Shown in pieces: positions 11,119 through 63,638 of a DNA stretch of 64,000 bases (position 1 is the stretch's first letter; each line of letters starts with the position of its first letter). The notes beneath the pieces were generated by a model. The model saw nothing but the letters and a program-made list of their open reading frames with translations, was not told the origin of the DNA and searched no databases. The position numbers were made by a program, and so were the translations under genes. Location of the stretch: IMG/VR virus record IMGVR_UViG_3300037010_003311, positions 124,001-188,000 of that record. One strand, written 5' to 3'.

Positions 11119-11120
11119 AT

Positions 11121-12743: not shown

Positions 12744-12790
12744 AATATCTTTATTTGAGCGACAGGAAAAGTTACTTAGGCCATGTGGCC
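12744..12790. repeat. 47-bp direct repeat, copy upstream of endonuclease gene
   Basis: Identical to 11072-11118. Confidence 0.95.
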
Positions 12791-12799
12791 TAAGTAACT
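12760..12799 (-). terminator. Intrinsic terminator after tail tube gene, with CCTGTCG tail
   Basis: AGTTACTTAGGCCA/TGGCCTAAGTAACT stem followed on the minus strand by a T tract and CCTGTCG. Confidence 0.8.
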
Positions 12800-22245: not shown

Positions 22246-22270
22246 AAAGATTTTTTTAACGACATGAAAA
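22246..22270. repeat. 25-bp direct repeat downstream of endonuclease pair
   Basis: AAAGATTTTTTTAACGACATGAAAA, 24/25 identical to 24903-24927. Confidence 0.85.
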
Positions 22271-22293
22271 AGTTGGGCCACCTGGACCACAAC

Positions 22294-23601
22294 TTAATCT
22301 ATTTTAAAAACAAAATTACCGGAATCAAAAATAGCTTTATAACCATTAAGGTCTATAACTAGTTCTTTTTCAGTTAAATTTTCTTTATATACTTCAAGCT
22401 TTGTTTCAAGCTTATGTTTTTGGAAACTCTGTCGACTATGAAGTTTTGGTAAATTGTAATTATCAGTAATGTCTTCTCGCCAATAAAAATAATTTGGCTC
22501 AGCAACCTTTTCTTCATGGAATCCAATCTGTCTATATAAGTTTCCTTCTGACCAACGCCTATTTGCATATGATTTAATACTACCTGTATATTTAGCTTTG
22601 AATGCTTTGAGTAACCTGCTTGCACCACCTACTACACTATAACCTTTTGCATTACAAAACCGCATAAGCTCCCAATCTGTATTCTTATCAAATCGGCTTT
22701 TACTAAATGTCATAATAGATACTAATTCTTTTTGGTAGAATAAAGCAAATCGAATAAGTGCTTTACCAGTTCCTTGCAAGTGGTTACTTTCAACGAACTG
22801 ATTGCTTATTTTTAATAAACCTTTATGAGCCCGGTTGCTAGAATCAATCTCTATAATATCACATTTCCGAGCATAAATTCTATTAGATAAACCAAGAGCA
22901 TTTATTATCATGCTTTTCCAAATAAGTTGTTTGTTAGGATGTAGCCATTCTATATCATACATATATAGTACTTTTATACCAGTTTCAAGGCCACGATTAG
23001 TTGTATTCAAAAAATTATTTTTTTTGGATTTAAGATTACTTCTGGCTTCGATAATTGATTCGGCATTTGGAGTGATTGGGGTAAGCTTAGTAGCTAATTC
23101 TTTACTAATAAGGCTATCATTCAATAACTCGACTATTACTATCGAAACTTGTTGGTCTGGGAAATATATATCATTATCTAAAATATTAGCCTTATCACCA
23201 GCTAATACATAGTTAAATGATCTAGCCTCCAGCCACTGTACAATACTAGCAATAATAGTTTTTTTATTATTATATGTAGCCTCAGCTGGTAGAATATTTG
23301 GGATGGTTGGTACCTCTGGTTCCACAGCTTGAGTTATATGTTTCTTTTTAGATATAGTATTTACAATTTTAGTGATTTTCATATCTTTAATAGTACTAGC
23401 CATTTTAGCTTGGCAAGAATCACTACAGCAATATTTAAAACCAGCATCCGAATTTTTCCAAGCTTTTAAATTACCGCAATCCGGATTAATGCATTCTAAA
23501 TTATCTAAAGTTAATTGGAACTTATCCTTGTATTTTAGAATTCGTTTTATATTGAATTTATCTATGTTTGGATAATACTCTTTAAGTGTCGCTTCCGTCA
23601 T
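22294..23601 (-). CDS. Hef-like endonuclease paralog with degenerate nuclease motif
   Basis: Likely start ATG 23601 (AAGGGA RBS, 1 nt after the upstream stop). Shared N-terminal Zn-finger domain, no KYG repeats, DNDIYFPDQQVSIVIVELL in place of the nuclease motif, complete NHLQG domain. Confidence 0.75.
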   Translation of the reverse strand: MTEATLKEYYPNIDKFNIKRILKYKDKFQLTLDNLECINPDCGNLKAWKNSDAGFKYCCSDSCQAKMASTIKDMKITKIVNTISKKKHITQAVEPEVPTIPNILPAEATYNNKKTIIASIVQWLEARSFNYVLAGDKANILDNDIYFPDQQVSIVIVELLNDSLISKELATKLTPITPNAESIIEARSNLKSKKNNFLNTTNRGLETGIKVLYMYDIEWLHPNKQLIWKSMIINALGLSNRIYARKCDIIEIDSSNRAHKGLLKISNQFVESNHLQGTGKALIRFALFYQKELVSIMTFSKSRFDKNTDWELMRFCNAKGYSVVGGASRLLKAFKAKYTGSIKSYANRRWSEGNLYRQIGFHEEKVAEPNYFYWREDITDNYNLPKLHSRQSFQKHKLETKLEVYKENLTEKELVIDLNGYKAIFDSGNFVFKID

Positions 23602-24838: not shown

Positions 24839-24902
24839 CTAATTAAAATAGTACTGGGACTATAAACTGTAACAATATCCCTGTCGTAGGTGTTGCTAAA
24901 TA

Positions 24903-24927
24903 AAAGATTTTTTTAACGACAGGAAAA
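24903..24927. repeat. 25-bp direct repeat upstream of endonuclease pair
   Basis: AAAGATTTTTTTAACGACAGGAAAA. Confidence 0.85.
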
Positions 24928-24953
24928 TTTTAGAGGCTTACGCCTCTAAAATT
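24917..24953 (-). terminator. Intrinsic terminator after major capsid gene
   Basis: AATTTTAGAGGC-GTAA-GCCTCTAAAATT stem with GNRA loop, then TTCCTGTCG. Confidence 0.8.
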
Positions 24954-31669: not shown

Positions 31670-32249
31670 TTTTAACCTTTTCAAAATTTGCATTTTTTGC
31701 TTTAATTCTAGCATCAACTTCTTTTAAAAATTGCGTTAGATCTATTTCAATTTGACCAACTAGCTGATAGATAACATTAACATCCATTACAAAGATAAGT
31801 TCGTTTAAGATATTTACATAATCCGTAAAACTTTCTAAAGTATTGACTTCTGTATTGTCCAATACAGAAAGGTTTTGTAAATTTTTTATCATATCTTGTA
31901 ATTCGTTAATTTTATCATACAACCTGAACTGAATAAATTTCTGATCGGCTATATCGATACTCTGTCCCATAATTGCGGCACTTGTATCTGGATCTGCGGT
32001 ACTAAGATCCCCATCACTAGTACCAAGATCACCAGACCCATCTAAACCATCTGAACCATCTGAACCATCGGACCCATTATCCTGAGAGCTAGATGACCCA
32101 TCTGAACCATCAGACCCATCATCTTGCTGGTTAGATGAACCAGATCCTTGCTGGTTAGAGCCACGACTGGCGCCATCTTCCAGTAGTAGCAATAAATCTG
32201 TATTATTTTCAAGTAAGAATTGTCTTGCTTGTGGTGATAATTTTAACAT
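31650..32249 (-). CDS. Acidic low-complexity protein, possible prohead core/internal protein
   Basis: Likely start 32249; GSD/DGS repeats; N-terminal LLE motifs resemble gp21-type cleavage sites. Confidence 0.5.
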   Translation of the reverse strand: MLKLSPQARQFLLENNTDLLLLLEDGASRGSNQQGSGSSNQQDDGSDGSDGSSSSQDNGSDGSDGSDGLDGSGDLGTSDGDLSTADPDTSAAIMGQSIDIADQKFIQFRLYDKINELQDMIKNLQNLSVLDNTEVNTLESFTDYVNILNELIFVMDVNVIYQLVGQIEIDLTQFLKEVDARIKAKNANFEKVKNANLNS

Positions 32250-32262: not shown

Positions 32263-35200
32263 TTATAAAATTTCTTCACTCGTTTCATGATAAGTAGTAT
32301 TCGTTACATAATTAGAAACTGGCTTTACCAAATTAGAGAATGATTCCATTACATAAGTAGCACCAACTTTTAATTTAGTATCAGTATTGTAATCTGCGGC
32401 AACATCTAATGTTCGATTAAATAAATCGGCACCATTTATAAAAGCACTATTTTTAAAGTTTGTAACATTCGTAGAAACAACTGGGTCGGTATCTTTTTTG
32501 ATTAGATATTGATAATTAACTTCATCGAAATTAGTATAAATTAATCCAGGTAAGTTAAAGGTTGCTCTAATCGTATCTATATTGGTTTGGGTATAACTTA
32601 TCCCTGTACCAGCTAAATAAATGTTCCAACCAACTATGCCATAATTAGTACCAAGATTAGATACTGCATTGATAGTTAATGGATTAAATGAAAGATCTAA
32701 ACTGGAACCAACTTGTGATCTTTCTAAAAAGGTATCATCCCAGTTATCCTTATTACTATCATTAAATAAGGTTTGTAATATTGCCCAACTAGCCGAGGTA
32801 GCTTCTGGCCATTGTACAATACCAGCTTCATAGTATTTATTAGCCGAACCACCTATACTGGTAGCTAAACCAGTTAAAGACGTAAGCTTATTATTTTTAG
32901 CAATATAATTCCCAAAGACTGTGGTTGGACCACCAACTAAATCAGTAAGCATATTATTATTGCAACGAAAGTTGCCTTTTATAGTTGTAGGCAAACGATT
33001 ACCTATAATTGTAGTAAGACTTTTTAACTGGTTATCTTCAATAAAGAAATCTGATTCAGCTGTTGTATCCCAAATCCATTTAACATACTTACCAACTAAA
33101 TCTTTATATTTAGTAGCAGCTGTACCATTATTAGAAAGAATTTTATCTAATGTAAGATAGTTTCTAGATGATATAGAGGTAGCATTATCTATATTATCTA
33201 AGTGTACCCAGATAAAACTTGGTAAATGATTACTTAACCTGGATTCTTTTTCGATATTTATAAATTCGCGGGTACCTGGATCAACTAGGTTATTATTTAC
33301 TATCTCTTCATATTCAAAATAACGATTACTTAAATATACCGGACCGGTTGCTTTAATAATATAAGAATCAGTTACTTGATTGTAAGTTATGGTACAGCTA
33401 TCTTGTAAGCCATAGTAGCCTAAATCGCGCACAATAGTTTGTGGTGCACTAATATTTAATTCATAAATTTTATTTGCTCCATACCTCGATAACTGATCTA
33501 GATTCTCTAGCCCATTTATATATGTTGGCTCATTAAAAGAAAAATTATTATCATTTGGGTAAATGTTAATTGATTCGTTATTTAGTGCTGAAGTGAAAGT
33601 ACCAAAATCAGTTATTATCTCAATCTCATTATCAGTAACATTTTTATCATTTGGTGTCATAGCTTTGTAATTGATACCATTGAAGCTATTAGTGCGAACC
33701 GAATCGAAATAGTTATCAGTCACATATTCACTTTTAATAAAATTTATATCCCCAATCGGAGTACCATCATAATTAGTAATATCAATTATTTTAAAATAAT
33801 TTAATTCATACTCTGGTAAATAATCATGAGTGAATGTAGTAGAAATCTGGGAAAGAGTAGTACTAAAACTTATTTTAATATCTAAAGTAACATTATGTAA
33901 ATCTTCATACAACACTGGATTAGATATAAGATATGGATAAATTCTTATTTTATCACCAGGCATATTTTTATCTAACTTACTATTATAATTAATCCGGAAC
34001 ATATCCTGGAAAGGTACCCCGTTATCATTAATTATTTCTATTGCCGTCATTGTAGCACCAGTTACTGAACCAAAACCAAAATCAAATTCATTTAAAGTAG
34101 AGTATAGGTACTGTTTTGTTCCATCCATCTGAGGCCCACCAACCGAACCAGTTACTAAATTATATGCTGTAAACGGGATACGCTTAATAGTATAAAAATT
34201 AATAGTATAACTACCAGTTACACTAGATCTAGTTATAGTGTAGTTAATTTTATCAGTTGTTCCTGTGGATACTTGACTAGATACTAGTTGTAGGTCAGTA
34301 CTTATAGTTGACATATTGATCCAAGAGAAATACTTAATGAAAGAGTTATCTATTGGCTGGTATGGCTCTATTGGTAAAATTAAAGTATTACCAACATTAT
34401 GATTAGCCAGAAGCTTATCATTATAAAACATATTTAGTTTTATAATAACTGGGGCGCTCGCTTGGATTGGATTATTTTCACTATCGATTAATGAAAAACT
34501 ATATTTACCATTCTGGGTATCAGTGTGGTTTATTCTATTGAATTTAACATACTGACCAGTTACTGGCTTAGAAACTATTTCGAATGTTTCAGTAAATGGA
34601 AATATTGCCGGAGATGTTAATAATTCGGTTTCTGGTTGATAGTCTAAGATAAAGTCTTCAGTATAATATTTATTCTGGATTGCATCAAGCCCTATATCAT
34701 TATTGATCTCCATTATAAAATCAATTGAATTCTGCCCAGCGAAAATAATTAAATACCTTTCGATCTGTATAATTGCAGCCCTGGAATAATTAGAATAATC
34801 ATTACTAATAATCTGATAACTCGTAACTGGTTTCTGTATAGAAGAAGGGGTAATTATATATTCACCATTTCCGCGAGAACCAAGTATCTGATTAGTAAGT
34901 ACTTCTATTGCCCCACCTGTTGCAATGGACCCTAGAGATGGATCAACTTTAATAAGTTTAGAATCGGTACCATATACTAGTTCTCCTGTGCTATTATCAA
35001 CAGTTATAGATATAGTTCTATAATATAATGAACCATCAGTTCCATACTCAGGGAAAATATAACCATCGTTATTTTTATAGTAACTATAATCAAAATATTT
35101 ATTAACCGATTTCAAGTAGCAGAATTTACTAGCTATAGTTTCATCACTAGGAGTTTGGATTTCCGTAATAACTGCTCGGTTCTTATCAAATTGTGACATA

Positions 35201-38007
35201 TAAATTGTTTCAGTATGGAAGTTACTATTATTTGGAAGTTTCATAGTTCTAGTTAATGGTAAAGTAATTAGAGTATCTTGTGACCAAGCTCCAATATTGG
35301 TACCACTAAATTTAGGATTATTATCATCAATAGTATCCCCATTATTAATGACTCGGTTACCAAATCTAGTATCATTAATTATAAGTTTAATAATTGGTGT
35401 AAATGGTTGTGAATAATCAAGATTATCTACAATCTGTACTAATGGATTATTAGTAATACTTCCACTACTTATACCTTGGTTAAATACACCATTTTGACTA
35501 TATACCGATTTATCTCTTAAGGTAATAAAGCCATCGTTATAAACAACATTATAATTATCAGTTAAAATTACATAAAATTTGTAAGTAATATTATCTGCAG
35601 TAGTTATAGGCCTGGTATCATCGAAATAACATTTTTGAAATATTAAATCGTCTTTAGTGAATCCATAAACTGGTTCTGAGAACGTAAGAGTTACTATTTT
35701 CGTACGATTCGTAGTATCAGTAGTATCCACTGCGATACTAAAACTTGCGGTTGGCGTTGTTTTTGCAACAATCGATAGAGTTTTAGTAAGTACTACTTGC
35801 ATATCAGTTACATCAGTTAGTGTTATAGTTAAATGGTTATTACCAAGGGCAAATAGATATTCGATTGACCAAGTACCATCGGTATCTGAAATCGGTTCTG
35901 CTAAAATAGTTCCGGTATCTGAATTTTTAATTGTAATTTTAGAGTTTGGCTCAGTATCGGTTCCATATAGAGTTAAGTATTGTTTATTACTATAATCTTC
36001 GGCTATTGTTAAAATTGTAGCATTAGTAAGTTCTTGATATGGGGTAACCGGATTCAATTCATCATAAACATAAATATGATTAGACGTATTTTGATTTTGC
36101 TCATATATAATGAAAGCTGCATTAGAAAGTGCACTAGGAGTACCTATTGCATCAATAATACTATATTGTATAGTATTAGCCCCAATATTAAGATTTGGTA
36201 ATTGAAATATAAAACCATACTCATTTTCTGCTCTAGCATCAACGTTTAATGATTTAGAGAAAGCAAGAGTCGTACCAACATTTACACCATTTAAAAATAT
36301 ATTAACTGATGGTAGATCTCTAACTCCATTTTTATCTAAAATAACAAGAGGATCAATAAAACCAAGAATAAAGGGTTTCTGGTTACTAGTTGTACCATAC
36401 ATTTGCATCCGATGCAATTCATTAAAAGTTTCCCAACTATTTAAATTAGCTATCGTTTTAATATTTGGTACATAATAACTAGATATAATTGGAGCAGCTG
36501 GTAAATTACTCTGTACTGTAAAGTTTATAGCTGGTGAAGCTTTGCTTTCAAAGTTAGTATCTTTTACAGTGAAATAAATACTATGACTACCATCGGTTAA
36601 AGGATTAAATAAATATGTTTCAAAGCTACCATCCTGGTTAATAGAAGTTTGACCAAGTAAAGTCCTAACCCCAGCTATATCTTCGTAAATATTAATTAAA
36701 CTTTGATATTCGGAAATATTAATATTATAAGCTATTTTGGTAGCATATTCATTTATAGTTAATTTTTCTTTATTTTCATATATATGTAATAGTGTTGGAT
36801 CAATTATAGCGTTATTATCAATTACCATAGTTTCTGAAGAACTTGAAGCAGCATCTACTATGTCGGTTGGTATTGGAAACTGATTTAAATTAACAATACC
36901 ACTATTTATAACAGTTGGATCGAAACCAGCAACCGATGTAACCGGACTAACATTATTGACAGATGGTAACCTATTAATAAGACTATATAAATAAGTACCT
37001 TGTGTACTACCTTTTGGAATATAAATATTTTTAAGATTCTGCATCTTACAAACTATATCATGCCCAGAATGATTGATAGAATTTGAATATAATGTGAGTC
37101 TATCATAAAAAGTTAAACCCGTATATATTGGATCAGATTTTAATCTAAGAATATTATAATCACCAGTGCTAATATTAACTATTTTAAAGTCGTTGCTATA
37201 ATTATAAATATTTGGGATTACTTCATTATCTTTATAAATATAATTTACTAAGGTTGGAATAGTAAAAGTTTTAAATAGTTTTGGTATTACTATTCTTGAA
37301 TAAATATAAGTGGTGCCCACTATATCATAGGTTACAGCATTATCAATACTAAGAAACCATCTATTAATATTTATTGTCCCGGATGTATTGTAGGTAGCAT
37401 TATGTTTTTTTAGATTTAACTTATTATAGTTAGTTTGCGAACCTATATTATTGACACTAGTATCATTTAGAGTTATATAAAAATAACTATCGAAGTCAGT
37501 ATTTTGATGCAATAAATCTATAAAGTTACTAACTAGTGTACCAGCTGGTATCGTAAATGGTTGCTCATATACAACTATGGTTTCTAAGTTTACTGCGACT
37601 GGTTTATTAATTTCGATACTATTTAGTAATAGCTTAATAGTATTAGACCCTGAGGTCTGGGGAATTTGGAAAGTGATATCAGTTATATTTTCTCGGATTG
37701 CAGTAACTGGTGCAACCGTTTTAGTATCAACTGTATTGTAAAGTTGTACTCCTGTTTCGGCATTAACTACTCTATCACCAGATATATCTAAAACAGGTAT
37801 GGTAGTAAACCTATTCAGGTTCGCAGTAATTGTAACAGTATCTGAATTATCTAATAAGTTAGCATTAGGGATAAAAATATAATTGCTATCTCCATATCTA
37901 GGATAACTATTAGTGTTTAAATAATCAACCTCTTTTGCTGGATTAAAGGCATTGGTTAAGGTGAGATTCGCTAATTGCGAAATGTTAGTTATTGGTGTAG
38001 TTGCCAT
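32263..38007 (-). CDS. Very large virion protein with Ig-like domains and C-terminal LRR-like repeats
   Basis: 1914 aa; LTDGSHSI, GTWSI and TLTFSEPVYGF Ig-like signatures; N.LTSL.G.P..V.G.F.C repeats near the C-terminus. Confidence 0.65.
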   Translation of the reverse strand: MATTPITNISQLANLTLTNAFNPAKEVDYLNTNSYPRYGDSNYIFIPNANLLDNSDTVTITANLNRFTTIPVLDISGDRVVNAETGVQLYNTVDTKTVAPVTAIRENITDITFQIPQTSGSNTIKLLLNSIEINKPVAVNLETIVVYEQPFTIPAGTLVSNFIDLLHQNTDFDSYFYITLNDTSVNNIGSQTNYNKLNLKKHNATYNTSGTININRWFLSIDNAVTYDIVGTTYIYSRIVIPKLFKTFTIPTLVNYIYKDNEVIPNIYNYSNDFKIVNISTGDYNILRLKSDPIYTGLTFYDRLTLYSNSINHSGHDIVCKMQNLKNIYIPKGSTQGTYLYSLINRLPSVNNVSPVTSVAGFDPTVINSGIVNLNQFPIPTDIVDAASSSSETMVIDNNAIIDPTLLHIYENKEKLTINEYATKIAYNINISEYQSLINIYEDIAGVRTLLGQTSINQDGSFETYLFNPLTDGSHSIYFTVKDTNFESKASPAINFTVQSNLPAAPIISSYYVPNIKTIANLNSWETFNELHRMQMYGTTSNQKPFILGFIDPLVILDKNGVRDLPSVNIFLNGVNVGTTLAFSKSLNVDARAENEYGFIFQLPNLNIGANTIQYSIIDAIGTPSALSNAAFIIYEQNQNTSNHIYVYDELNPVTPYQELTNATILTIAEDYSNKQYLTLYGTDTEPNSKITIKNSDTGTILAEPISDTDGTWSIEYLFALGNNHLTITLTDVTDMQVVLTKTLSIVAKTTPTASFSIAVDTTDTTNRTKIVTLTFSEPVYGFTKDDLIFQKCYFDDTRPITTADNITYKFYVILTDNYNVVYNDGFITLRDKSVYSQNGVFNQGISSGSITNNPLVQIVDNLDYSQPFTPIIKLIINDTRFGNRVINNGDTIDDNNPKFSGTNIGAWSQDTLITLPLTRTMKLPNNSNFHTETIYMSQFDKNRAVITEIQTPSDETIASKFCYLKSVNKYFDYSYYKNNDGYIFPEYGTDGSLYYRTISITVDNSTGELVYGTDSKLIKVDPSLGSIATGGAIEVLTNQILGSRGNGEYIITPSSIQKPVTSYQIISNDYSNYSRAAIIQIERYLIIFAGQNSIDFIMEINNDIGLDAIQNKYYTEDFILDYQPETELLTSPAIFPFTETFEIVSKPVTGQYVKFNRINHTDTQNGKYSFSLIDSENNPIQASAPVIIKLNMFYNDKLLANHNVGNTLILPIEPYQPIDNSFIKYFSWINMSTISTDLQLVSSQVSTGTTDKINYTITRSSVTGSYTINFYTIKRIPFTAYNLVTGSVGGPQMDGTKQYLYSTLNEFDFGFGSVTGATMTAIEIINDNGVPFQDMFRINYNSKLDKNMPGDKIRIYPYLISNPVLYEDLHNVTLDIKISFSTTLSQISTTFTHDYLPEYELNYFKIIDITNYDGTPIGDINFIKSEYVTDNYFDSVRTNSFNGINYKAMTPNDKNVTDNEIEIITDFGTFTSALNNESINIYPNDNNFSFNEPTYINGLENLDQLSRYGANKIYELNISAPQTIVRDLGYYGLQDSCTITYNQVTDSYIIKATGPVYLSNRYFEYEEIVNNNLVDPGTREFINIEKESRLSNHLPSFIWVHLDNIDNATSISSRNYLTLDKILSNNGTAATKYKDLVGKYVKWIWDTTAESDFFIEDNQLKSLTTIIGNRLPTTIKGNFRCNNNMLTDLVGGPTTVFGNYIAKNNKLTSLTGLATSIGGSANKYYEAGIVQWPEATSASWAILQTLFNDSNKDNWDDTFLERSQVGSSLDLSFNPLTINAVSNLGTNYGIVGWNIYLAGTGISYTQTNIDTIRATFNLPGLIYTNFDEVNYQYLIKKDTDPVVSTNVTNFKNSAFINGADLFNRTLDVAADYNTDTKLKVGATYVMESFSNLVKPVSNYVTNTTYHETSEEIL

Positions 38008-38056
38008 AAAAATCGCCTTCGTAATAAATTACCGATTTGTTGAATTAGTATTTTAA

Positions 38057-38096
38057 CGACAGGAAAAAGCTACTATGTTGTACAACATAGTAGCTT
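38057..38096 (-). terminator. Intrinsic terminator separating accessory block from virion module
   Basis: Perfect 30-bp palindrome AAGCTACTATGTTGTACAACATAGTAGCTT ending in a T tract and CCTGTCG on the minus strand. Confidence 0.8.
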
Positions 38097-38100
38097 AGGA

Positions 38101-38769
38101 CTAATTTAATGGAGACCGATTATAATTAATGTTTAAGATTTGCGCATATTTATAACCATACATATGACCATTTACTTTTAATGTGTTTAATGTAGCATCG
38201 ATTGATCTTAAATCTGGATTAGGTTTAGTTTCTTGGTTAACCACTTTTAAACCATCCATTATAAAACTTATATCTGATTCATTTAATTCATATGCTTCCC
38301 AACCACTAGATGGTTGACATTTGAAATTCCAGTGGTTAGAGCTAAGGATTGAATAGGTTCCGGCTTTTATTATTTCACCACCCCAATTACCCCACGCCTT
38401 AGGTATTGGTCTACTAATAATTTTACCAATATTATTCGCGATACCATGATCTGGATGCAGATCACTTTCCGGAAATAGTACTATTTCCGGTTTATAAGTA
38501 GACATCAAAGAACTCAAATCAGTTACAATTGCATGAATATCATTATTAGTAAGTTCTGTATCAAAATACAATGGATGGTTCATAACAATATTTAAACTTG
38601 CATAAAATTCTTTGACCTCTTTAAACCGATTATCAGTATCGTGCCTTCTACCAGAACATAAGGTATAAATCATTATTCTATATCCAGCATCCATATATTT
38701 TTTTATAATACCGAAGCATCCAAAAATTGCATCATCTAGATGAGCTTCAATTATTAGAATTGTTTTCAT
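38101..38769 (-). CDS. PIG-L / LmbE family N-acetylsugar deacetylase
   Basis: EAHLDD and HPDH metal-binding motifs. Confidence 0.85.
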   Translation of the reverse strand: MKTILIIEAHLDDAIFGCFGIIKKYMDAGYRIMIYTLCSGRRHDTDNRFKEVKEFYASLNIVMNHPLYFDTELTNNDIHAIVTDLSSLMSTYKPEIVLFPESDLHPDHGIANNIGKIISRPIPKAWGNWGGEIIKAGTYSILSSNHWNFKCQPSSGWEAYELNESDISFIMDGLKVVNQETKPNPDLRSIDATLNTLKVNGHMYGYKYAQILNINYNRSPLN

Positions 38770-38774
38770 TTATA

Positions 38775-39107
38775 TTAAACCTTTTTTCTTTTGTCCCAGT
38801 AACTAAAAAACTTAGGATCAGTATATCTAAAAATATCGGAATGTAATTCCTCGATTAAATTATCATTCGGATGTATAAATGGATGAACCGTATTCTGGTA
38901 CCATTTTTTTTCAACTAATACATACAATTCAATTATTGAATAATATTCAAGCCAAACATATTGCAGTTTGTCTAGATTATTACCAGTTAATGACTCATTA
39001 TATACTTTAGTAGGAAACCAAGCAAATTTCAATCGGGCTCGGAAGCAGGTTTCTTTCTCTTTTGCTAGCATCCGGATCTCTTCTGAAAATACAAAACCGA
39101 GATTCAT
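38775..39107 (-). CDS. Hypothetical protein
   Basis: 110 aa; overlaps the upstream stop (ATGA); FAWFP..V...VWLE motif common in small phage proteins. Confidence 0.65.
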   Translation of the reverse strand: MNLGFVFSEEIRMLAKEKETCFRARLKFAWFPTKVYNESLTGNNLDKLQYVWLEYYSIIELYVLVEKKWYQNTVHPFIHPNDNLIEELHSDIFRYTDPKFFSYWDKRKKV

Positions 39108-39517
39108 TCTTTAACCTCACCTCTAGTGCCTAACTGTAGTACCATCGAACATTGTTCTATATTATTATGTAACTGATCGAAAATGCGATGCACTAATATT
39201 TCATCTGCCTCTCTAGTTTCCCCTGGTTCTGAAGAACTATTCGGCTTCCTCCCCTGATTCAAATATTCTATCGCTTTAATCAGGTTATCATAAATTTTGG
39301 ACTTACCGCCTCGGTTGGCAAGCATGACTAAATCTATTTCGCTATGTGGAATAGATTTAGCCAACTCCTGGATCATGGTTTGATATGGTAAATTAACTGT
39401 TTCCGCTTCTGGCCCTAGGTATGGTAAATTAACTGTTTCCGCTTCTAACCCAGCCAATTCAAGATACTCAAAAAAATCTGGAGTATTATTATCCTTTGGA
39501 TTAATTGGATTTGGCAT
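39104..39517 (-). CDS. Hypothetical protein with duplicated EAETVNLPY
   Basis: 137 aa; exact 27-bp repeat at 39384-39410 and 39420-39446. Confidence 0.6.
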   Translation of the reverse strand: MPNPINPKDNNTPDFFEYLELAGLEAETVNLPYLGPEAETVNLPYQTMIQELAKSIPHSEIDLVMLANRGGKSKIYDNLIKAIEYLNQGRKPNSSSEPGETREADEILVHRIFDQLHNNIEQCSMVLQLGTRGEVKE

Positions 39518-39941
39518 CTACTGTACCTTCAGCTGGGACATCTTTTAAAGCTTCGGTAACCATTGTTGCTAACTCAGGGTTTGATTCAATAACTTCCAGT
39601 TGCTGTTTAGTATTAGCAATAACTGTTTGTTCCTTAATTAACCATAATTTAATAACTTTGGCGCTGAGTTCAGATTTATTTAGATTTCTTAATCCATCAA
39701 GTTGTTGTTTACTTAGTTTAGTTAAAGATAATTCTTTAATTTTTTTAATTAGTACAGATTTAGACTTTGGTTTAAAATATTTTTTAGCTTGGAGCAATTT
39801 AGCCTCTAGCGTAAGTTGATTACTATTCTGTTTAACTTGGTTTTTAAGCTTCTCCGCCCAATTCTGATCATCTGAGATTACTTCATCTTGCGCACTCGTC
39901 ATAACATCTAACTTGTGGTTTTGTACATCTTCATTCATCAT
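39501..39941 (-). CDS. Hypothetical protein
   Basis: 146 aa with AAGGA RBS. Confidence 0.65.
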   Translation of the reverse strand: MMNEDVQNHKLDVMTSAQDEVISDDQNWAEKLKNQVKQNSNQLTLEAKLLQAKKYFKPKSKSVLIKKIKELSLTKLSKQQLDGLRNLNKSELSAKVIKLWLIKEQTVIANTKQQLEVIESNPELATMVTEALKDVPAEGTVDAKSN

Positions 39942-40020
39942 ATTTCCTTTTAAAATTTAATTTATGTTATTGAGACGATCTACGTCTTTTTAATTATTTT
40001 GATAATACTTAGTGTATCAG

Positions 40021-40548
40021 CTATTTATTCTCTCTTCTATCATGAATCAATAATTTTTTATTTGTAACTATTTGATCAGTCATTTTAAATAATTGGCTTG
40101 GGCTAAAAATATTATCATGTGGAAGACAACAAGTTGAATAACCGTAAGTAATATTATTTATAGAACTTAATTTATCTTCTAATTCCGAAATTTGGAATTC
40201 TTTTAATAATATTCCAAATTCGTCACCACCAATACGAAATATTTCCGAGCCGATACAATCTCTAAATGTGGATTCTATATTACTAGATACCTCTTTTATT
40301 AATTTATCACCAGCGTCGAAACCATCTAAACGATTAATATTATGTAAATTATTAATATCAATCAGCACTAATAAAAAATTTTTCTTCTCATAAGTACATT
40401 GTTCGTATAATGTATTAAGATAATTATCAAAATCTTTACGTAATTTAAAACCAGTAAGAAAATCATATTTATAACGTTTAACTTCTTCTTTTAGATATTG
40501 TACTTCATCTATTAAATTAAAGAAATTTTGTTCATTAAATTCAATCAT
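40021..40548 (-). CDS. GGDEF-domain protein (putative diguanylate cyclase)
   Basis: DFLTG, LIDINNL, GFDAGDKLI, FRIGGDEF; likely start ATG 40548 with AGGGAG RBS. Confidence 0.9.
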   Translation of the reverse strand: MIEFNEQNFFNLIDEVQYLKEEVKRYKYDFLTGFKLRKDFDNYLNTLYEQCTYEKKNFLLVLIDINNLHNINRLDGFDAGDKLIKEVSSNIESTFRDCIGSEIFRIGGDEFGILLKEFQISELEDKLSSINNITYGYSTCCLPHDNIFSPSQLFKMTDQIVTNKKLLIHDRRENK

Positions 40549-40560
40549 ATAATACTCCCT

Positions 40561-40643
40561 ATGACAAGAAAAATAGATTAACCAAGCAGTTGTTGGATCT
40601 GATGGGGAAGAATGGATTGTCATCAACTGCTTGGTTAATCTAT
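40561..40643 (-). terminator. Terminator/attenuator immediately upstream of GGDEF RBS
   Basis: Perfect 20-bp stem (40573-40592/40624-40643) followed by TTTTCTTGTCA, a variant of the TTTTCCTGTCG tail. Confidence 0.7.
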
Positions 40644-40654
40644 CTAAATTCGAG

Positions 40655-40835
40655 GGGGACCTAGTAGCTACTAGGTCCCCTGGTACATATGTTTATACTC
40701 TAAAACAAACTCCGTACCACTTCTAAAGGCATGAACTAACATAAGGATGCTCGTTCATCTACCTTTGGCCAAAGATTATAGACTAGCTTTAGGATTTTGA
40801 ATTGGATCACTAAATCCATCGTCGCTACCCGGACT
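40655..40835 (-). ncRNA. Candidate multi-hairpin RNA / leader
   Basis: Non-coding and GC-richer than flanks; successive stems AAAGGT/GCCTTT + ATGAAC/GTTCAT, TGGTAC/GTACCA + GTTTGT/ATAAAC, and a 26-bp perfect palindrome at 40655-40680. Mismatches resolve as G-U on the minus strand. Confidence 0.5.
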
Positions 40836-40843
40836 TATAATTT

Positions 40844-41209
40844 TTAAAAAATATTTTTGATTAAATTACTAGTAGGAACTAAATCCGATTTATTCATAAT
40901 AATAAATGGTCCGCGTTCATCACTCGTAGTATTAATTGTTACGCGATTCTCTTCCATAATTTCGCGATACTGATTAGTCTTAGCGACCGCCTCATCACGA
41001 ATGGTAAGTAAAAAAGCATTTTTACATTTTAAAATTTGATAAGAGCTTCTAGTGTAAGAAGTCCCACCTTCCGAAAATACATATGGATATCCCTCACTAT
41101 CATAACCAGCAAAATGCCCTTCATTAATACCAAATTCGGTATTGTGTTCTTGGTACATAACTGGATCATTAAGTTCCAAAACTATTTCATTATACCTGTC
41201 GCATCTCAT
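40844..41209 (-). CDS. Hypothetical protein
   Basis: 121 aa; AAGGA RBS; upstream TATAGAAATAT motif. Confidence 0.7.
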   Translation of the reverse strand: MRCDRYNEIVLELNDPVMYQEHNTEFGINEGHFAGYDSEGYPYVFSEGGTSYTRSSYQILKCKNAFLLTIRDEAVAKTNQYREIMEENRVTINTTSDERGPFIIMNKSDLVPTSNLIKNIF

Positions 41210-41327
41210 TTCTAATCCTTTATTTTTAATTATTTTAATATTTCTATAATAATTTAAATATAATATTGGCTAACAATAAATACAATGATTGAAACTAAGT
41301 ACTATTAAAAAAAAGTTTTCACATGAT

Positions 41328-42065
41328 TCATACTATACATCTTGGTTTATTCGTTTTAACCGATCCAATATTAAGTATTTTATACAATTCGTTATCTTGA
41401 GTCATTATGTGAGTGCACCCTTCATCGATGGCAATTGCTAATTCATTTTGCCAAATAGTACCATCCCAAGCGTTAGTCTCTGGTAAATTAACAGAAGCCA
41501 TAAAAATACGTTTAGTTTCATCGTTTGGTGAAACTTCATCATTGTTGTCTTCTACAATGTACCAATCTTCAGCAAGTACATCGGTTTGTGATGCTAACCA
41601 CGGTACAATTTTGTTATCTGCGGTTTTCATATCAATATGGGCATTGTAATTGATTTCGGTACCTTCCGGATAAATACCAAGTAACGGTGCACGATTCACT
41701 TTAAACGTACTACCGGGTACAAGAAATAAAAACATACCTTTGCCATTCCAGCCAGTTCTAGCAACTTTATTACCCGTCTTTAATGCTTGGATGGCTTCCC
41801 CAAAATTTAAACCACTTGCAATTGGACTAGGTTCTGATTCCACAAATGGTTCAAAATTAGCATGGAAGTATTCTTTTGTCACTAACCATTGATCATCATG
41901 ATTCCTTGGGTTACGAGCTACCATGTCTCCCTGTTTAGGTTTATTGCCCACTGTGTCTACTGGCATCGAAATCGTTGATATATCTAATCCAAACATAACT
42001 TCTTCAAAAGTTACTGGTCTAAGTTCAGCTATTGCTGATCTTTTATATTTTTTAAAATTTTTCAT
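41328..42065 (-). CDS. Tad2/DUF2829 anti-defence sponge domain fused to extra N- and C-terminal domains
   Basis: LNFGEAIQALKTGNKVARTGWNGKGMFL...VPWLASQTDVLAEDW is the DUF2829/Tad2 signature. Confidence 0.85.
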   Translation of the reverse strand: MKNFKKYKRSAIAELRPVTFEEVMFGLDISTISMPVDTVGNKPKQGDMVARNPRNHDDQWLVTKEYFHANFEPFVESEPSPIASGLNFGEAIQALKTGNKVARTGWNGKGMFLFLVPGSTFKVNRAPLLGIYPEGTEINYNAHIDMKTADNKIVPWLASQTDVLAEDWYIVEDNNDEVSPNDETKRIFMASVNLPETNAWDGTIWQNELAIAIDEGCTHIMTQDNELYKILNIGSVKTNKPRCIV

Positions 42066-42135
42066 TATATTATTTCCTTTTAAAATCTAAGTTCATATGC
42101 TAGAACTTTAGTAGCTGATAATAAAGCATTGGTTC

Positions 42136-42231
42136 CTAATTATGGTTTGTGGTGACACCAATTTTATCTTGTATTAAACCATCAAGTGTATCTCGATCAA
42201 AATCGCGCAAATTATTTTTCATATTATCCAT
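42136..42231 (-). CDS. 31-aa small ORF (possibly a gene remnant)
   Basis: Strong GGAGG RBS and upstream promoter motif; MDNMKNNLRDFDRDTLDGLIQDKIGVTTNHN. Confidence 0.4.
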   Translation of the reverse strand: MDNMKNNLRDFDRDTLDGLIQDKIGVTTNHN

Positions 42232-42336
42232 CTTATGTCCTCCCTTTTAATTAATTACATAAATATTTCTATATTAGAAAAAATAGTAAAACAACTATTG
42301 ATAAAATGAGGTACGTCTCAAAAATTAGGATTTTCG

Positions 42337-42402
42337 CGACAGGAAAACTTGCGACTACTAACATAAAGTGAGGAGACAATATGTTAGCAGTTGCAAGTTT
42401 TC
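42337..42402 (-). terminator. Terminator of tRNA transcript with C/U-rich loop
   Basis: ~22-bp stem, loop TTGTCTCCTCACTT, ending TTTTCCTGTCG. Confidence 0.75.
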
Positions 42403-42410
42403 AATATTAA

Positions 42411-42486
42411 TGGTGGAGAATAGCGGGGTCGAACCGCTGACCTACTGCTTGCAAGGCAGTCGCTCTCCCAACTGAGCTAATTCCCC
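42411..42486 (-). tRNA. tRNA-Ala(TGC)
   Basis: GGGGAAT TA GCTC..GAGC G ACTGC CT TGC AA GCAGT..AGCGG TTCGACC CCGCT ATTCTCC A CCA; G3-U70 pair; encoded CCA. Confidence 0.97.
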
Positions 42487-42506
42487 ATTAAAATATGCAA
42501 TTCAAG

Positions 42507-42618
42507 TGTCTAAGTATAACTTAATCATTAAGAATTTTATACAACAAGGAAATCATAAAGGAGGACAAAGAATGGGAAATCAAAGAACGGCAACATGGAT
42601 TAAGGTTATACTTAGACA
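42507..42618 (-). ncRNA. Candidate sRNA: 20-bp closing stem with ~70-nt C/U-rich loop
   Basis: TGTCTAAGTATAAC(C)TTAATC stem; the loop contains TTTGTCCTCCTTTATGATTTCCTT; AACAAAT motif directly upstream. Confidence 0.5.
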
Positions 42619-42693
42619 ACTATTTGTTATCACTATTTAAAATACCAAGCAAGTGCAACTTAGGTCTTATTTTGTGTAGGAACTATTTAAACA

Positions 42694-42773
42694 TGGCTGG
42701 GGAATGTAGGATTCAAACCTACAATCTCTATATTGTAAATATAGAGCTCTAATCATTTGGAGTAAATTTTCCC
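42694..42773 (-). pseudogene. Degenerate tRNA-Val(TAC)-like element
   Basis: Intact anticodon stem CTATA-TTTACAA-TATAG and T stem GTAGG/CCTAC, but T loop TTTGAAT and mispaired acceptor and D stems. Confidence 0.65.
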
Positions 42774-42778
42774 ATTAT

Positions 42779-42854
42779 TGGATCGGAGTGGAGGGTTCGA
42801 ACCTCCGACACGCAGCGCCAAAAGCTGCTGTTCTACCAACTGAACTAACTCCGA
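42779..42854 (-). tRNA. tRNA-Gln(TTG)
   Basis: TCGGAGT TA GTTC..GAAC A GCAGC TT TTG GC GCTGC..GGAGG TTCGAAC CCTCC ACTCCGA T CCA; U1-A72 pair. Confidence 0.93.
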
Positions 42855-42860
42855 ATAGGA

Positions 42861-43029
42861 GATAGCCGCGCCATCATTGATTACACAGTAGAGGTGTTTT
42901 AACTTATCTAGTATATTAAACTGGTTCACATATCTGCTTCACATTTTTACATCATGACTTCTCACCCCGGTCTGATATAACGCTGCTAAATAACGATTTT
43001 AAGTTTAATGGCATTCATCATCTGGCCAA
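42861..43029 (-). ncRNA. Candidate structured RNA upstream of tRNA-Gln
   Basis: Several long-range helices with G-U pairs on the minus strand; no ORF. Confidence 0.4.
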
Positions 43030-43045
43030 GATTAGATATTAGTTA

Positions 43046-44050
43046 TTAACGAGTTTGATAATTTACCATATCCGAAATGAGTTCATCTAACTTTTTATTA
43101 TATTTCGATATAGTTAATGGAATAAACATATTTTTAAGCATCCGTTTATTAATCTCTTCTTTGTAAACTTTAGTGTACTTAATCATATCTAAGTTCGAAT
43201 ATAAATCTTCTTTTTTACAAATTTTTATAATTTTACTAAGAACCTCTGTTAAATAATTATCACAAATATTTTGATCAGTTACTGTAAAACCAATATTAAA
43301 AATTAAGTTTTCTCGGTTTTTTGAACACTCAATAATTTTTAATAATTCCGGTTTAACATATTTTGATTCTATATTTGTGAACACTCTACGGATTTTTGGA
43401 TTTATAATACACGGTTTATTATTGATAACATTATGAATTAAAGTTGGTAATACCATCCCTGATTCTGGCTCATGGCCTATTCCAGTAATATTAAAAAATC
43501 TTACTATTTGTACATTAGGCAATTCTCTAAATAAGAACTCGGATACTAATTTTTGGCTCGCGTAGCCACCACGTTTGCTCAAAAGCGGGTTACTTATAGA
43601 TATTGGGGAATTATCAATTATATCCCCATTCTCTCCAAATACTTCGCTACTACTAGCAAACACTAATGGTATTTTACTCTTTTCAATAAAGTTATACACT
43701 TTAAGATTAATAGTTAACGCATCAGCAATTGTATTTTGATTAAGAATATTATTAACTCCAACTGGACTAGCAAGATGTATACAACAATCAAAAAAATGTT
43801 TCTTAAACTTAGGAAGTTTCTCTTTTACTAAATCTATATTATAACGAATAAGATTTTTATCATTGTAGTTATCTAAAAGGCGGCTACGACCATAATGCGT
43901 AATAACCTTAGGTTCATCCCCACCAATCATATAATTATATTCTTTATCAATTATATGAACTCTATAATTAAGATCTAATAGCCATTTAGTTATATGACTT
44001 CCAATAAAACCAGCTCCTCCAATAATTAAAATATTTTTCTTTTTTTTCAT
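43046..44050 (-). CDS. NAD-dependent nucleotide-sugar epimerase/dehydratase (extended SDR)
   Basis: GGAGFIG, HLASPVG, ASSSEVFG, YASQK, RFFN. Confidence 0.9.
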   Translation of the reverse strand: MKKKKNILIIGGAGFIGSHITKWLLDLNYRVHIIDKEYNYMIGGDEPKVITHYGRSRLLDNYNDKNLIRYNIDLVKEKLPKFKKHFFDCCIHLASPVGVNNILNQNTIADALTINLKVYNFIEKSKIPLVFASSSEVFGENGDIIDNSPISISNPLLSKRGGYASQKLVSEFLFRELPNVQIVRFFNITGIGHEPESGMVLPTLIHNVINNKPCIINPKIRRVFTNIESKYVKPELLKIIECSKNRENLIFNIGFTVTDQNICDNYLTEVLSKIIKICKKEDLYSNLDMIKYTKVYKEEINKRMLKNMFIPLTISKYNKKLDELISDMVNYQTR

Positions 44051-63526: not shown

Positions 63527-63604
63527 TCTTTTGGTTTTTGATAATTTAATTAATATTTCTATAATATAGTTTATAGTGCTTGTGCTAGATCTGTGTTGAT
63601 CCAG

Positions 63605-63638
63605 CGACAGGAAAAGTGATTGGGCATAAAGCCCAATC
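63605..63638 (-). terminator. Intrinsic terminator after tail-fibre gene
   Basis: GATTGGGC/GCCCAATC stem followed by ACTTTTCCTGTCG. Confidence 0.75.

What the first reader, a model, noticed from the sequence alone, without database searches (positions are those of the whole stretch)
40549..40843. Riboswitch/attenuator-like architecture ahead of the GGDEF gene
Seen: ~290 nt of non-coding DNA with three to four hairpins whose mismatches are G-U on the minus strand, then a 20-bp terminator whose tail ends at the GGDEF RBS. The terminator loop holds ATGACAA, complementary to the TTGTCAT tail beside the RBS. I see no promoter motif between the terminator and the gene. Inference: GGDEF expression depends on regulated read-through, or this is a stand-alone sRNA. 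I could not match the c-di-GMP riboswitch consensus.
Basis: partly seen in the sequence, partly recalled or inferred. Interest (0 to 1): 0.6.

Follow-up and report, generated by a model that had tools for sequence, protein, structure and literature searches.

The report
Phage terminator cassette, not a riboswitch
The structured spacer ahead of this phage's GGDEF gene is most likely not a ligand-sensing riboswitch but a patchwork junction that ends in one enlarged, partly decayed copy of a terminator-like hairpin cassette repeated about twenty times in the genome.

Summary
The window lies in a 226-kb uncultivated phage from microbial-mat, sediment and vent metagenomes. The 295-nt spacer (40549-40843, minus strand) and its 20-bp hairpin are real. 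The excess structure comes only from two perfect palindromes, 40573-40643 and 40655-40680. The upstream 164 nt folds no better than shuffled sequence (z = -1.6).

No Rfam family fits, and I found no antiterminator pairing. The ATGACAA/TTGTCAT match is a chance-level 7-mer that two relatives do not keep.

Relatives do not keep the leader. One (81% identical GGDEF) lacks two of the five hairpins. Others place GGDEF directly behind a short hairpin, or overlapping an EAL gene.

The long hairpin is kept. In the 81% relative its tail is TTTCCTGTTGT, a genome-wide motif. About 19 intergenic copies of [quoted passage not shown] exist, and orthologous stems show compensatory changes. The window's own tail has decayed (8 of 11).

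Whole gene modules are gained, lost or reordered at these repeats, as with the PeSL cassettes of T4-like phages.

GGDEF probably depends on read-through from a promoter-like box before the upstream 121-aa gene. Nothing suggests that a ligand controls it. There is no RNA evidence.

The parts
40549..40843 (-). Non-coding spacer between the 121-aa ORF and the GGDEF gene (295 nt, 38.6% G+C against 31.9% for the genome). It is a patchwork of segments with different histories.
40573..40643 (-). Long hairpin H5. It has a perfect 20-bp stem (arms 40573-40592 and 40624-40643) and a 31-nt loop with a pyrimidine-rich UUCCC centre. It occupies the place of the hairpin of the dispersed cassette.
   Evidence: It is kept in L006 and L007, with 15 of 19 pairs invariant, one compensatory change, two G-U pairs on the gene strand and one mismatch. 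In related metagenome contigs most changes fall in the loop.
40561..40572 (-). U-rich tail TTTTCTTGTCAT. It is a decayed copy of the cassette motif TTTCCTGTCGC (8 of 11 positions).
   Evidence: A weight matrix built from the cassette tails scores the window 0.5 bits, L006 0.3 bits and the L007 orthologue 18.1 bits, which is in the range of genuine copies. Alignment.
40546..40560 (-). Shine-Dalgarno sequence AGGGAG (40555-40560) and the ATG of GGDEF (40546-40548).
40655..40680 (-). Hairpin H4, a perfect 11-bp G+C-rich stem with a 4-nt loop and no U-tract or motif behind it. It is present in the window and in L006 only and is absent from L007.
40682..40718 (-). Weak hairpin H3. L007 keeps the sequence at about 80% identity, but the outer stem is lost there.
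40725..40766 (-). Hairpin H2. In L007 the orthologue is a clean 10-bp stem followed by ATTTTT, which looks like the terminator of the 121-aa gene.
40781..40830 (-). Weak hairpin H1. It lies in an insertion of about 80-100 nt found only in the window and L006. L007 and a related contig lack it (read joint 40742->40846). Its outer stem is broken in L006.
40775..40801 (-). Promoter-like site TTCAAA-N15-TATAAT inside the insertion. The spacing is too short for the scan's 16-18 nt rule. It would be the possible start of an sRNA or of a second GGDEF transcript.
   Evidence: Read directly. The scan did not call it.
40844..41209 (-). 121-aa ORF of unknown function, the upstream gene of the unit. In relatives it sits at different positions relative to GGDEF.
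41214..41265 (-). Repeated promoter-like box (core TATAGAAATATTAA at 41235-41248, then TAATTAAAAATAAAGG and the ATG). It is the nearest candidate start of the transcript that reaches GGDEF.
40021..40548 (-). GGDEF gene (175 aa). RIGGDEF is intact, with an N-terminal coiled-coil-like segment.
38056..38096 (-). Canonical cassette copy: a 13-bp hairpin with a 4-nt loop plus TTTCCTGTCGT. It lies directly behind the stop of the preceding ORF (38101-38769) and ahead of the 1914-aa gene.
42336..42397 (-). Cassette copy behind the tRNA cluster: a long hairpin plus TTTCCTGTCGC, followed 48 nt later by a promoter-like box.
24916..24953 (-). Canonical cassette copy.
22259..22295 (-). Cassette copy with tail TTTCATGTCGT.
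12759..12799 (-). Canonical cassette copy. A second copy at 11087-11120 has the same 3' arm and tail but has lost the 5' arm.
63604..63638 (-). Canonical cassette copy, followed 17 nt later by a promoter-like box.

Best explanation
The spacer is a fast-evolving junction between two shuffled gene modules in a variable island (tRNAs, Tad2-like gene, 121-aa ORF, GGDEF) of an uncultivated 226-kb phage.

Its last element is a 20-bp hairpin with a U-rich tail. This is the local copy, enlarged and with a decayed motif, of a cassette dispersed through the genome. The cassette consists of a stem-loop of variable sequence placed right behind a stop codon, a conserved tail UUUCCUGUCGC, an A-run, and the ribosome-binding site of the next gene.

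The cassette most likely acts at the RNA level as an intrinsic terminator or attenuator and as a 3'-end hairpin. GGDEF would then be the distal gene of a transcript that starts at the promoter-like box before the 121-aa gene, or further upstream. It would be made from the fraction of polymerases that read through up to three hairpins (H2, H4, H5). This would be constitutive damping, not ligand control.

At the DNA level the repeated cassettes and promoter-like boxes serve as recombination points where modules are inserted, lost or reordered.

Shown: the dispersed family; conservation of the stem structure with changing sequence; orthology of the long hairpin's tail with the canonical motif; loss of the rest of the leader in relatives; absence of an antiterminator; module gains and losses bounded by the repeats.

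Inferred: termination or attenuation, read-through, and which promoter is used.
For: 1. The family exists.
- TCCTGTC occurs 17 times on the minus strand and 3 times on the plus strand. Nearly every intergenic copy is preceded by a hairpin.
- Twenty-one motif copies with a hairpin of -9 kcal/mol or better were found. Only 3.8% of random 38-nt windows fold that well.
- About 19 copies are intergenic. Most have the hairpin starting within -10 to +42 nt of an upstream stop codon, and the next start codon 14-125 nt downstream.

2. Structure matters, not sequence. Stems differ between copies. The orthologous cassette in five relatives is 100% paired, with three compensatory pairs and one U-G pair.

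3. The long hairpin belongs to the family. In L007 the same hairpin is followed by TTTTTTCCTGTTGTAAAAA. This scores 18.1 bits, and only 20 of 453,266 genome positions score as high.

4. A copy marks the end of a transcription unit. Behind the last minus-strand gene, at the point where the two gene blocks converge, there is a hairpin plus TTTTCCTGCCCAAAAAAACAAA and no gene downstream on that strand.

5. The leader is not kept.
- H1 and H4 are missing in L007.
- L009, L094 and L098 have only a short canonical cassette before GGDEF.
- In L146 GGDEF overlaps an EAL gene.
- The parts of the spacer shared with L007 are about 80% identical, which equals third-codon-position identity (75-80%) and gives no sign of extra constraint.

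6. Modules are shuffled at the repeats.
- L007 and L095 carry the 121-aa homologue between sequences that are contiguous in L009. The breakpoints lie at the cassette.
- Related metagenome contigs skip 40743-40845, 39749-41251 or 41269-42267, or join 41251 to 40021, which gives the order GGDEF then 121-aa gene as in L094.

7. No riboswitch features were found.
Against: - There is no transcript evidence of any kind. All six sequencing runs that hold the phage are DNA.
- A conserved 11-nt tail is not needed for intrinsic termination. Its conservation suggests sequence-specific recognition by a phage polymerase, an endonuclease or an antiterminator, which this explanation does not account for.
- The window's own tail fails the motif matrix (0.5 bits). 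Its membership rests on orthology with L007.
- A 31-nt loop is unusual for a terminator. L007 and the read variants partly keep its UUCCC centre, which may mean an extra function.
- Only three distinct sequences of the long hairpin are available, so its covariation is not significant (175 of 500 shuffles do as well).
- The phage's RNA polymerase usage is unknown. The Pfam model for sigma-70 region 2 found nothing. The search with the T7-type RNA polymerase model was uninformative, because its control rang in no genome.
Confidence: 0.6

Rival explanations
1. The cassette tail is a sequence-specific signal, either a short promoter for a phage-encoded polymerase or a cleavage site for an endoribonuclease. 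On this reading the downstream mRNA, including that of GGDEF, gets its own 5' end just behind the hairpin. Read-through is then irrelevant or secondary.
For: - Eleven conserved bases plus an A-run directly behind hairpins of free sequence are more than an intrinsic terminator needs.
- Many copies lie 14-40 nt before a start codon with no other promoter-like sequence between.
- The motif is kept in relatives.
Against: - A full copy sits behind the last gene of a converging block, where there is nothing to express.
- Long-form copies are followed, at a variable distance of 17-53 nt, by a separate promoter-like box.
- The copy before GGDEF has decayed in the window and, by a different change, in L006, yet the gene stays intact.
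- No T7-type polymerase was detected, although that search is weak.
Confidence: 0.18
2. The spacer encodes a stand-alone small RNA of about 200 nt. It would start at the TTCAAA-N15-TATAAT site (40775-40801) and end at the long hairpin.
For: - There is a perfect TATAAT with a weak -35.
- A strong terminator-like hairpin lies about 200 nt downstream.
- Weak hairpins favour the minus strand.
- The promoter-bearing segment is a discrete insertion.
Against: - The 15-nt spacing is outside the usual range, and the scan did not call the site.
- The segment exists only in the window and in L006, where two predicted stems are already broken.
- The body folds at chance level.
- There is no Rfam match and no other copy in the genome.
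Confidence: 0.08
3. One reading: a ligand-sensing riboswitch or regulated attenuator. Upstream hairpins would form an aptamer that decides whether the long hairpin terminates transcription before GGDEF.
For: - The layout resembles one: a structured leader, a terminator-like hairpin, then a ribosome-binding site.
- The gene is a nucleotide-signalling enzyme.
- Relatives L094 and L098 carry a different, highly conserved leader of about 160 nt before their cassette and GGDEF.
Against: - No Rfam family matches, even at E <= 10.
- The upstream 164 nt has z = -1.56.
- No antiterminator complementarity was found.
- The loop-tail pairing is not conserved.
- H1 and H4 are missing in L007, and the whole leader is missing in L009, L094, L098 and L146.
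- The same terminal layout precedes unrelated genes.
Confidence: 0.05
4. The palindromes act only as DNA, as recombination hot spots or as small mobile palindromic insertions. They would have no role in RNA.
For: - The two strong hairpins are perfect palindromes and equally stable on both strands.
- Module breakpoints coincide with the repeats.
- H4 is present or absent as a unit.
Against: - All copies have the same orientation as the genes (17 minus against 3 plus, following the gene strand).
- They sit just behind stop codons and just before ribosome-binding sites.
- G-U and U-G pairs occur only on the gene strand in orthologous stems.
- No target-site duplication flanks the long hairpin.
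Confidence: 0.07

Closest known systems
PeSL cassettes (promoter-early stem-loops) of T4-like phages RB49, phi1, PST and nt-1 (PMC2839356, PMC4122927)
   Same: - Both are short composite regulatory sequences repeated in intergenic spaces of variable regions.
- Both contain a stem-loop placed between a stop codon and the next ribosome-binding site.
- In both, gains, losses and replacements of small ORFs between close relatives are bounded by the repeats.
- Near-identical pairs flank single small ORFs here, as in RB49 and phi1.
   Different: - PeSLs are defined by a strong sigma-70-like promoter next to the stem-loop, with conservation over about 100 bp.
- Here the conserved part next to the stem is an 11-nt tail, TTTCCTGTCGC, with no -35/-10 pattern.
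- The promoter-like box TATAGAAATATTAA is a separate repeat at variable distance, and many copies lack it.
- The phage is not a recognisable T4 relative. PHROGs recognises only a tail sheath among six large proteins.
- Terminator and promoter activity were measured for PeSLs and not here.
Intrinsic (factor-independent) terminators and constitutive attenuators inside operons
   Same: A stable stem is followed at once by a U-rich run. The hairpin lies between two co-oriented genes with no promoter behind it.
   Different: The 31-nt loop and 20-bp stem are far outside the usual size. The canonical copies have only 3-4 U and then a conserved CCUGUCGC.
c-di-GMP-I and c-di-GMP-II riboswitches and other nucleotide-sensing riboswitches with terminator expression platforms
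   Same: A long leader, a terminator-like hairpin and a ribosome-binding site come before a gene of nucleotide second-messenger metabolism.
   Different: There is no model match, no conserved aptamer, no antiterminator and no conservation across homologues.
RNase III processing hairpins between genes of phage T7
   Same: Long, nearly perfect intergenic stems of about 20 bp sit between co-transcribed genes. Cleavage would leave a 3' hairpin on the upstream message and free the downstream ribosome-binding site.
   Different: This is a recalled resemblance only and was not tested. T7 sites have an internal loop at the cleavage site, whereas this stem is perfect. The canonical copies (10-14 bp) are too short for RNase III.

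Membership tests
c-di-GMP-I / c-di-GMP-II riboswitch (or any Rfam riboswitch or leader) | Match to the family covariance model at or above the gathering score | tested here: not met
   The gathering scan of the window finds only two tRNAs. The permissive scan of 40400-41000 at E <= 10 lists only snoRNA, miRNA and sRNA noise on the long hairpin, and no riboswitch.
Riboswitch or attenuator architecture in general | A sensor domain conserved in sequence and structure across homologous loci | tested here: not met
   H1 and H4 are absent in L007. The leader is absent in L009, L094, L098 and L146. The upstream 164 nt has z = -1.56. The shared parts are no more conserved than third codon positions.
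Riboswitch or attenuator architecture in general | An alternative (antiterminator) pairing that competes with the terminator stem | tested here: not met
   Only four 7-nt inverted matches occur in 331 nt, and none of them pairs with either stem arm. The loop-tail match is not conserved.
Intrinsic terminator | A stable stem followed immediately by a U-tract, downstream of a gene on the same strand | tested here: met
   The 20-bp stem (about -32 kcal/mol) is followed by UUUU(U)CUUGU, 271 nt behind the stop codon of the 121-aa gene. The scan did not call it because of the 31-nt loop.
Intrinsic terminator | Transcripts end there | not testable with these tools
   No RNA run holds the phage.
Dispersed hairpin + TTTCCTGTCGC cassette of this phage lineage | Hairpin directly followed by the conserved tail motif | tested here: inconclusive
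   The window tail matches 8 of 11 positions and scores 0.5 bits, and L006 scores 0.3 bits; 562 genome positions score as well as the window tail. The orthologous tail in L007 scores 18.1 bits, within the range of genuine copies (14.5-33.6 bits).
Dispersed hairpin + TTTCCTGTCGC cassette of this phage lineage | Position between a stop codon and the next ribosome-binding site, on the gene strand | tested here: met
   The tail is followed by AGGGAG and the ATG. The element lies on the same strand as all neighbouring genes.
PeSL (T4-like promoter-early stem-loop) | Repeated intergenic stem-loop cassettes that bound module gains and losses between close relatives | tested here: met
   About 19 copies exist. 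The L007/L095 against L009 indel and the read joints lie at the repeats.
PeSL (T4-like promoter-early stem-loop) | A strong sigma-70-like promoter adjacent to the stem-loop | tested here: not met
   No -35/-10 pattern lies next to the hairpins. The promoter scan of 39500-43200 finds fewer sites than in shuffles (16 against 19.8). A separate AT-rich box stands at variable distance.
C/D-box snoRNA (SNORD12) | Gathering score; C box and D box with a terminal stem | tested here: not met
   The score is 35.4 bits against a gathering score of 43. Forty model positions, including the D-box side, are unmatched. The C-box-like UGAUGA is UGAUAA in L007.

The most novel reading that the evidence does not exclude
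The conserved tail UUUCCUGUCGC behind free-sequence hairpins could be the recognition signal of a so far undescribed, lineage-specific transcription punctuation system. That system might be a factor-dependent terminator or antiterminator, a processing site, or a hairpin-plus-motif promoter in an uncharacterised jumbo phage. The enlarged hairpin before GGDEF, with its kept UUCCC loop centre, could be a gene-specific variant that recruits an extra regulator of this second-messenger gene.
Probability: 0.15. Interest if true: 0.55.

Novelty: new variant of a known kind. Interest (0 to 1): 0.3.

Why it matters
The riboswitch lead can be dropped. That saves effort on a phage-borne c-di-GMP switch that is most likely not there.

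What remains has modest value. This is a deeply divergent 226-kb phage lineage from mats and vents. Its genes are punctuated by a compact, easily recognised cassette and by a second promoter-like box. Accessory genes, including GGDEF, Tad2-like, receiver and EAL genes that probably interfere with host signalling and defence, are reshuffled at these repeats. That extends the PeSL idea of mobile regulatory cassettes beyond T4-like phages. The conserved 11-nt tail also gives a defined target for finding the factor that reads it.

Tried and rejected
- A phage database blastn of 40000-41300 gave no match.
- Exact-pattern scans of viral contigs for the two palindromes gave none.
- A scan for the cassette tail plus A-run gave 32 single hits, which is the chance level, and no contig with several copies.
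- A scan for a 27-mer of the L094/L098 leader gave none.
- Genome-collection scans found nothing for the long hairpin. The promoter-like box gave two unrelated AT-rich hits.
- The metagenome-contig scan with a GGDEF profile returned only distant GGDEF genes (at most 42% identity) and no close relatives. Loci from human-gut metagenomes in that list were not opened.
- The only IMG/VR relative (L005, 35% identity) has its own TTGACT-N17-TATAAT promoter and lacks the cassette.
- A MAFFT alignment of 21 cassette copies was not in structural register, so RNAalifold predicted nothing. A covariance model of the cassette was therefore not built. A weight matrix plus per-copy folding was used instead.
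- I considered that the 121-aa protein might be an RNA-binding (KH) protein acting on the C-rich loop. The Pfam hit is below the cut-off (18.2 against 23.4 bits). The AlphaFold model is unusable (pLDDT 41). The Atlas search gave nothing above noise. The idea was dropped.
- An anti-Shine-Dalgarno role for the loop or the tail was considered. The possible pairings are 4-5 bp and are not kept in L006 or L007, so the idea was rejected.
- Searches of the phage's own genome: the sigma-70 region 2 model found nothing, and the T7-type RNA polymerase search was uninformative because its control rang in no genome.
- PHROGs recognised only a tail sheath among six large proteins.

Full report
**Context.** The window is bases 124001-188000 of a 226,657-bp IMG/VR virus record with 31.9% G+C. 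The runs that hold it are all DNA, from microbial-mat, sediment and hydrothermal-vent metagenomes. Around the finding every gene is on the minus strand. In transcription order they are:
- three tRNAs (42411-42854);
- a hairpin cassette and a small ORF;
- a 245-aa Tad2-like gene (41328-42065);
- a 121-aa ORF (40844-41209);
- the 295-nt spacer;
- a 175-aa GGDEF gene (40021-40548) with RIGGDEF intact.

**The observation.** The spacer, the hairpins and the layout "20-bp stem, U-rich tail, AGGGAG, ATG" are all in the sequence.
- The whole region folds far better than shuffles (z = -5.9), but so does the opposite strand (z = -5.1).
- The signal comes from two perfect palindromes. H5 is at 40573-40643, with a 20-bp stem and a 31-nt loop. 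H4 is at 40655-40680, with an 11-bp stem and a 4-nt loop.
- The upstream 164 nt, holding H1-H3, has z = -1.56, and 14 of 200 shuffles fold as well.
- The minus-strand advantage of 11 kcal/mol comes from these three weak hairpins.
- The ATGACAA/TTGTCAT complementarity is one of four 7-nt inverted matches in 331 nt, which is what chance predicts.
- No segment is complementary to either arm of H5, so there is no antiterminator.
- Rfam gives nothing at gathering scores. At E <= 10 it gives only miRNA and snoRNA noise on H5. The SNORD12 hit (35.4 bits against 43) lacks the D-box half, and its UGAUGA is not kept in a relative.

**A dispersed cassette.** A genome-wide search for perfect hairpins showed that many are followed on the gene strand by the same words, TTTCCTGTCG.
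- TCCTGTC occurs 17 times on the minus strand and 3 times on the plus strand, following the gene strand.
- Allowing two mismatches in TTTCCTGTCGC and asking for a hairpin of -9 kcal/mol or better just upstream gives 21 copies. Only 3.8% of random 38-nt windows fold that well.
- About 19 copies are intergenic. Their hairpins mostly start within -10 to +42 nt of the stop codon of the preceding ORF. The stems are 8-16 bp and differ in sequence, with loops of 4-6 nt.
- The tail is followed by one or two bases, an A-run and, 14-125 nt later, a Shine-Dalgarno sequence and a start codon.
- Window copies lie at 63604-63638, 42336-42397, 38056-38096, 24916-24953, 22259-22295 and 12759-12799. A half copy lies at about 11087-11120.
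- One full copy stands behind the last minus-strand gene, at the point where the plus and minus gene blocks converge. No gene follows it on that strand. This speaks for a role at transcript 3' ends rather than as a promoter.
- A second repeat is an AT-rich promoter-like box (TACTATT, about 8 nt, GTAT, TATAGAAATATTAA, 2 nt, TAATTAAA, then the ribosome-binding site). It precedes many genes, including the 121-aa ORF, where the core matches perfectly at 41235-41248. It follows long-form cassettes at variable distance.

**Relatives.** IMG/VR and the JGI metagenome collection gave no close relatives. The word-index protein search did, and their contigs were fetched.
- L006 (GGDEF 95% identical) has the same spacer with about 13 changes. 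Several break predicted pairs of H1, of the small GGCC palindrome and of H2. Its tail reads TTTTTTCCTATCAT.
- L007 and L008 (81%) have a 197-nt spacer. It lacks the H1 segment of about 80 nt and lacks H4. It keeps H2 as a clean 10-bp stem plus ATTTTT, and it keeps H5.
- In L007 the tail of H5 is TTTTTTCCTGTTGTAAAAA. It scores 18.1 bits on the cassette matrix, as high as genuine copies. The window and L006 tails score 0.5 and 0.3 bits. H5 is thus the hairpin of a cassette whose tail has decayed independently in the window (C to T) and in L006 (G to A).
- In L009 (77%), L094 and L098, GGDEF lies directly behind a short canonical cassette. In L146 it overlaps the stop of an EAL gene. In L005 (35%) it has its own TTGACT-N17-TATAAT promoter.
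- The H5 stem in the three available versions has 15 of 19 invariant pairs, one G-C to A-U exchange, two G-U pairs on the gene strand and one mismatch. That is too few sequences for significance.
- The orthologous short cassette in five relatives is 100% paired, with three compensatory pairs.
- The spacer parts shared by the window and L007 are about 80% identical, the same as third codon positions of the flanking genes (75-80%). Nothing beyond the stem is visibly constrained.

**Shuffling.** Gene order differs between relatives:
- GGDEF, 121-aa gene, Tad2, receiver (L094);
- 121-aa gene, spacer, GGDEF, Tad2, receiver (L007);
- GGDEF, Tad2 (L009, L098);
- Tad2, 121-aa gene, spacer, GGDEF (window).

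The sequence upstream of the cassette is the same in L007, L009 and L095. The 121-aa module is present or absent exactly at the cassette. Contigs of four metagenomes laid on 38000-43500 show joints that skip 40743-40845 (the H1 segment), 39749-41251 (GGDEF plus spacer plus 121-aa gene) or 41269-42267 (Tad2). Others join 41251 to 40021 across about 20 nt that read like the promoter-like box, which gives the L094 order. In those contigs, changes in H5 fall mostly in the loop. This behaviour is that described for PeSL cassettes of T4-like phages (PMC2839356, PMC4122927). The difference is that PeSLs carry a sigma-70-type promoter beside the stem-loop, whereas here the conserved neighbour is the 11-nt tail.

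**Mechanism.** The best-supported reading is that H5 is a terminator- or attenuator-type hairpin of a generic punctuation cassette. GGDEF would be expressed by read-through from the box at 41235-41248 or from further upstream, damped by H2, H4 and H5. Nothing points to a ligand.
- The main weakness is that the conserved tail is unexplained by simple intrinsic termination. It may be read by a phage factor, which is the promoter or processing rival (0.18).
- The sRNA rival rests on a TTCAAA-N15-TATAAT site inside a lineage-specific insertion (0.08).
- The riboswitch reading keeps about 0.05.
- Only RNA end mapping can settle this, and no RNA run holds the phage.

**Limits.**
- The cassette is confined to this lineage. 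Scans of viral contigs and of GTDB genomes found no other carrier.
- The host and the polymerase used are unknown.
- The 121-aa protein could not be assigned.

Noticed in passing
L094:1938-2092, L095:236-392, L098:1862-2020 (relatives; absent from the window's genome): A non-coding element of about 150 nt, closed by a 21-bp stem, lies between a tRNA cluster and the GGDEF/121-aa module. RNAalifold predicts 55 pairs, and 14 of them show compensatory changes among only three sequences. No Rfam family matches. This looks like a genuine structured RNA of unknown kind.
   Followed up: partly
L094:2086-2290 and L098:2014-2230: A further leader of about 160 nt lies directly before the cassette and GGDEF. 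It is about 93% identical between two relatives whose cassette stem differs by three compensatory pairs and whose 5' UTRs differ. It contains a run of stop codons in all three frames, so it is non-coding. This is a better riboswitch-like candidate than the window's spacer, but only two sequences exist, and an exact 27-mer scan found no more.
   Followed up: partly
Genome-wide; window copies at 63604-63638, 42336-42397, 38056-38096, 24916-24953, 22259-22295, 12759-12799 and 11087-11120: Near-identical cassette pairs flank single small ORFs. The genome positions are 224564/225043, 201591/201948, 120500/121954 and 61642/62754/63633, and in the window 11097/12769, where one copy has lost its 5' arm. 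This is the arrangement that yields excisable mini-circles in RB49 and phi1.
   Followed up: partly
window 41214-41265, 42243-42288, 24821-24863, 63542-63587; also L007, L009, L094-L098: A second repeated intergenic box with core TATAGAAATATTAA is followed by TAATTAAA and the ribosome-binding site. It is probably the promoter type of this lineage. It is also a recombination point: the read joints and the changes in gene order end in it.
   Followed up: partly
window 40021-42065; L007, L009, L012, L094, L096, L098, L146: The small stand-alone GGDEF gene travels with Tad2-like (Thoeris anti-defence), receiver-domain, EAL, Macro and HU-like genes in a variable island behind a tRNA cluster. This suggests a set of genes that manipulate host nucleotide signalling and defence. 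In L098 the GGDEF gene appears split into two ORFs (77 and 102 aa).
   Followed up: no
window 41328-42065: The Tad2-like protein of the window is 245 aa, with the Tad2 domain at residues 87-171. The relatives' versions are 112-115 aa. The window's version therefore has N- and C-terminal extensions or a fusion.
   Followed up: no
window 40580-40636 (minus): The loop of the long hairpin gives a sub-threshold SNORD12 match (35.4 bits, E = 1.4e-5 for the 601 nt searched) through UGAUGAC and UUCCCCAUCAGAUC. It has no D box and is not conserved in L007, so I judge it chance.
   Followed up: yes
genome 98310-98486 (outside the window): At the point where the plus- and minus-strand gene blocks converge, a cassette copy is followed by a second large hairpin (16-bp stem, 24-nt loop). 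This is probably a bidirectional terminator region.
   Followed up: partly
window 32263-38007, 3588-8573, 27710-31717: Three very large ORFs (1914, 1661 and 1335 aa) have no PHROG match at E <= 1e-5. The phage is very distant from described ones.
   Followed up: no
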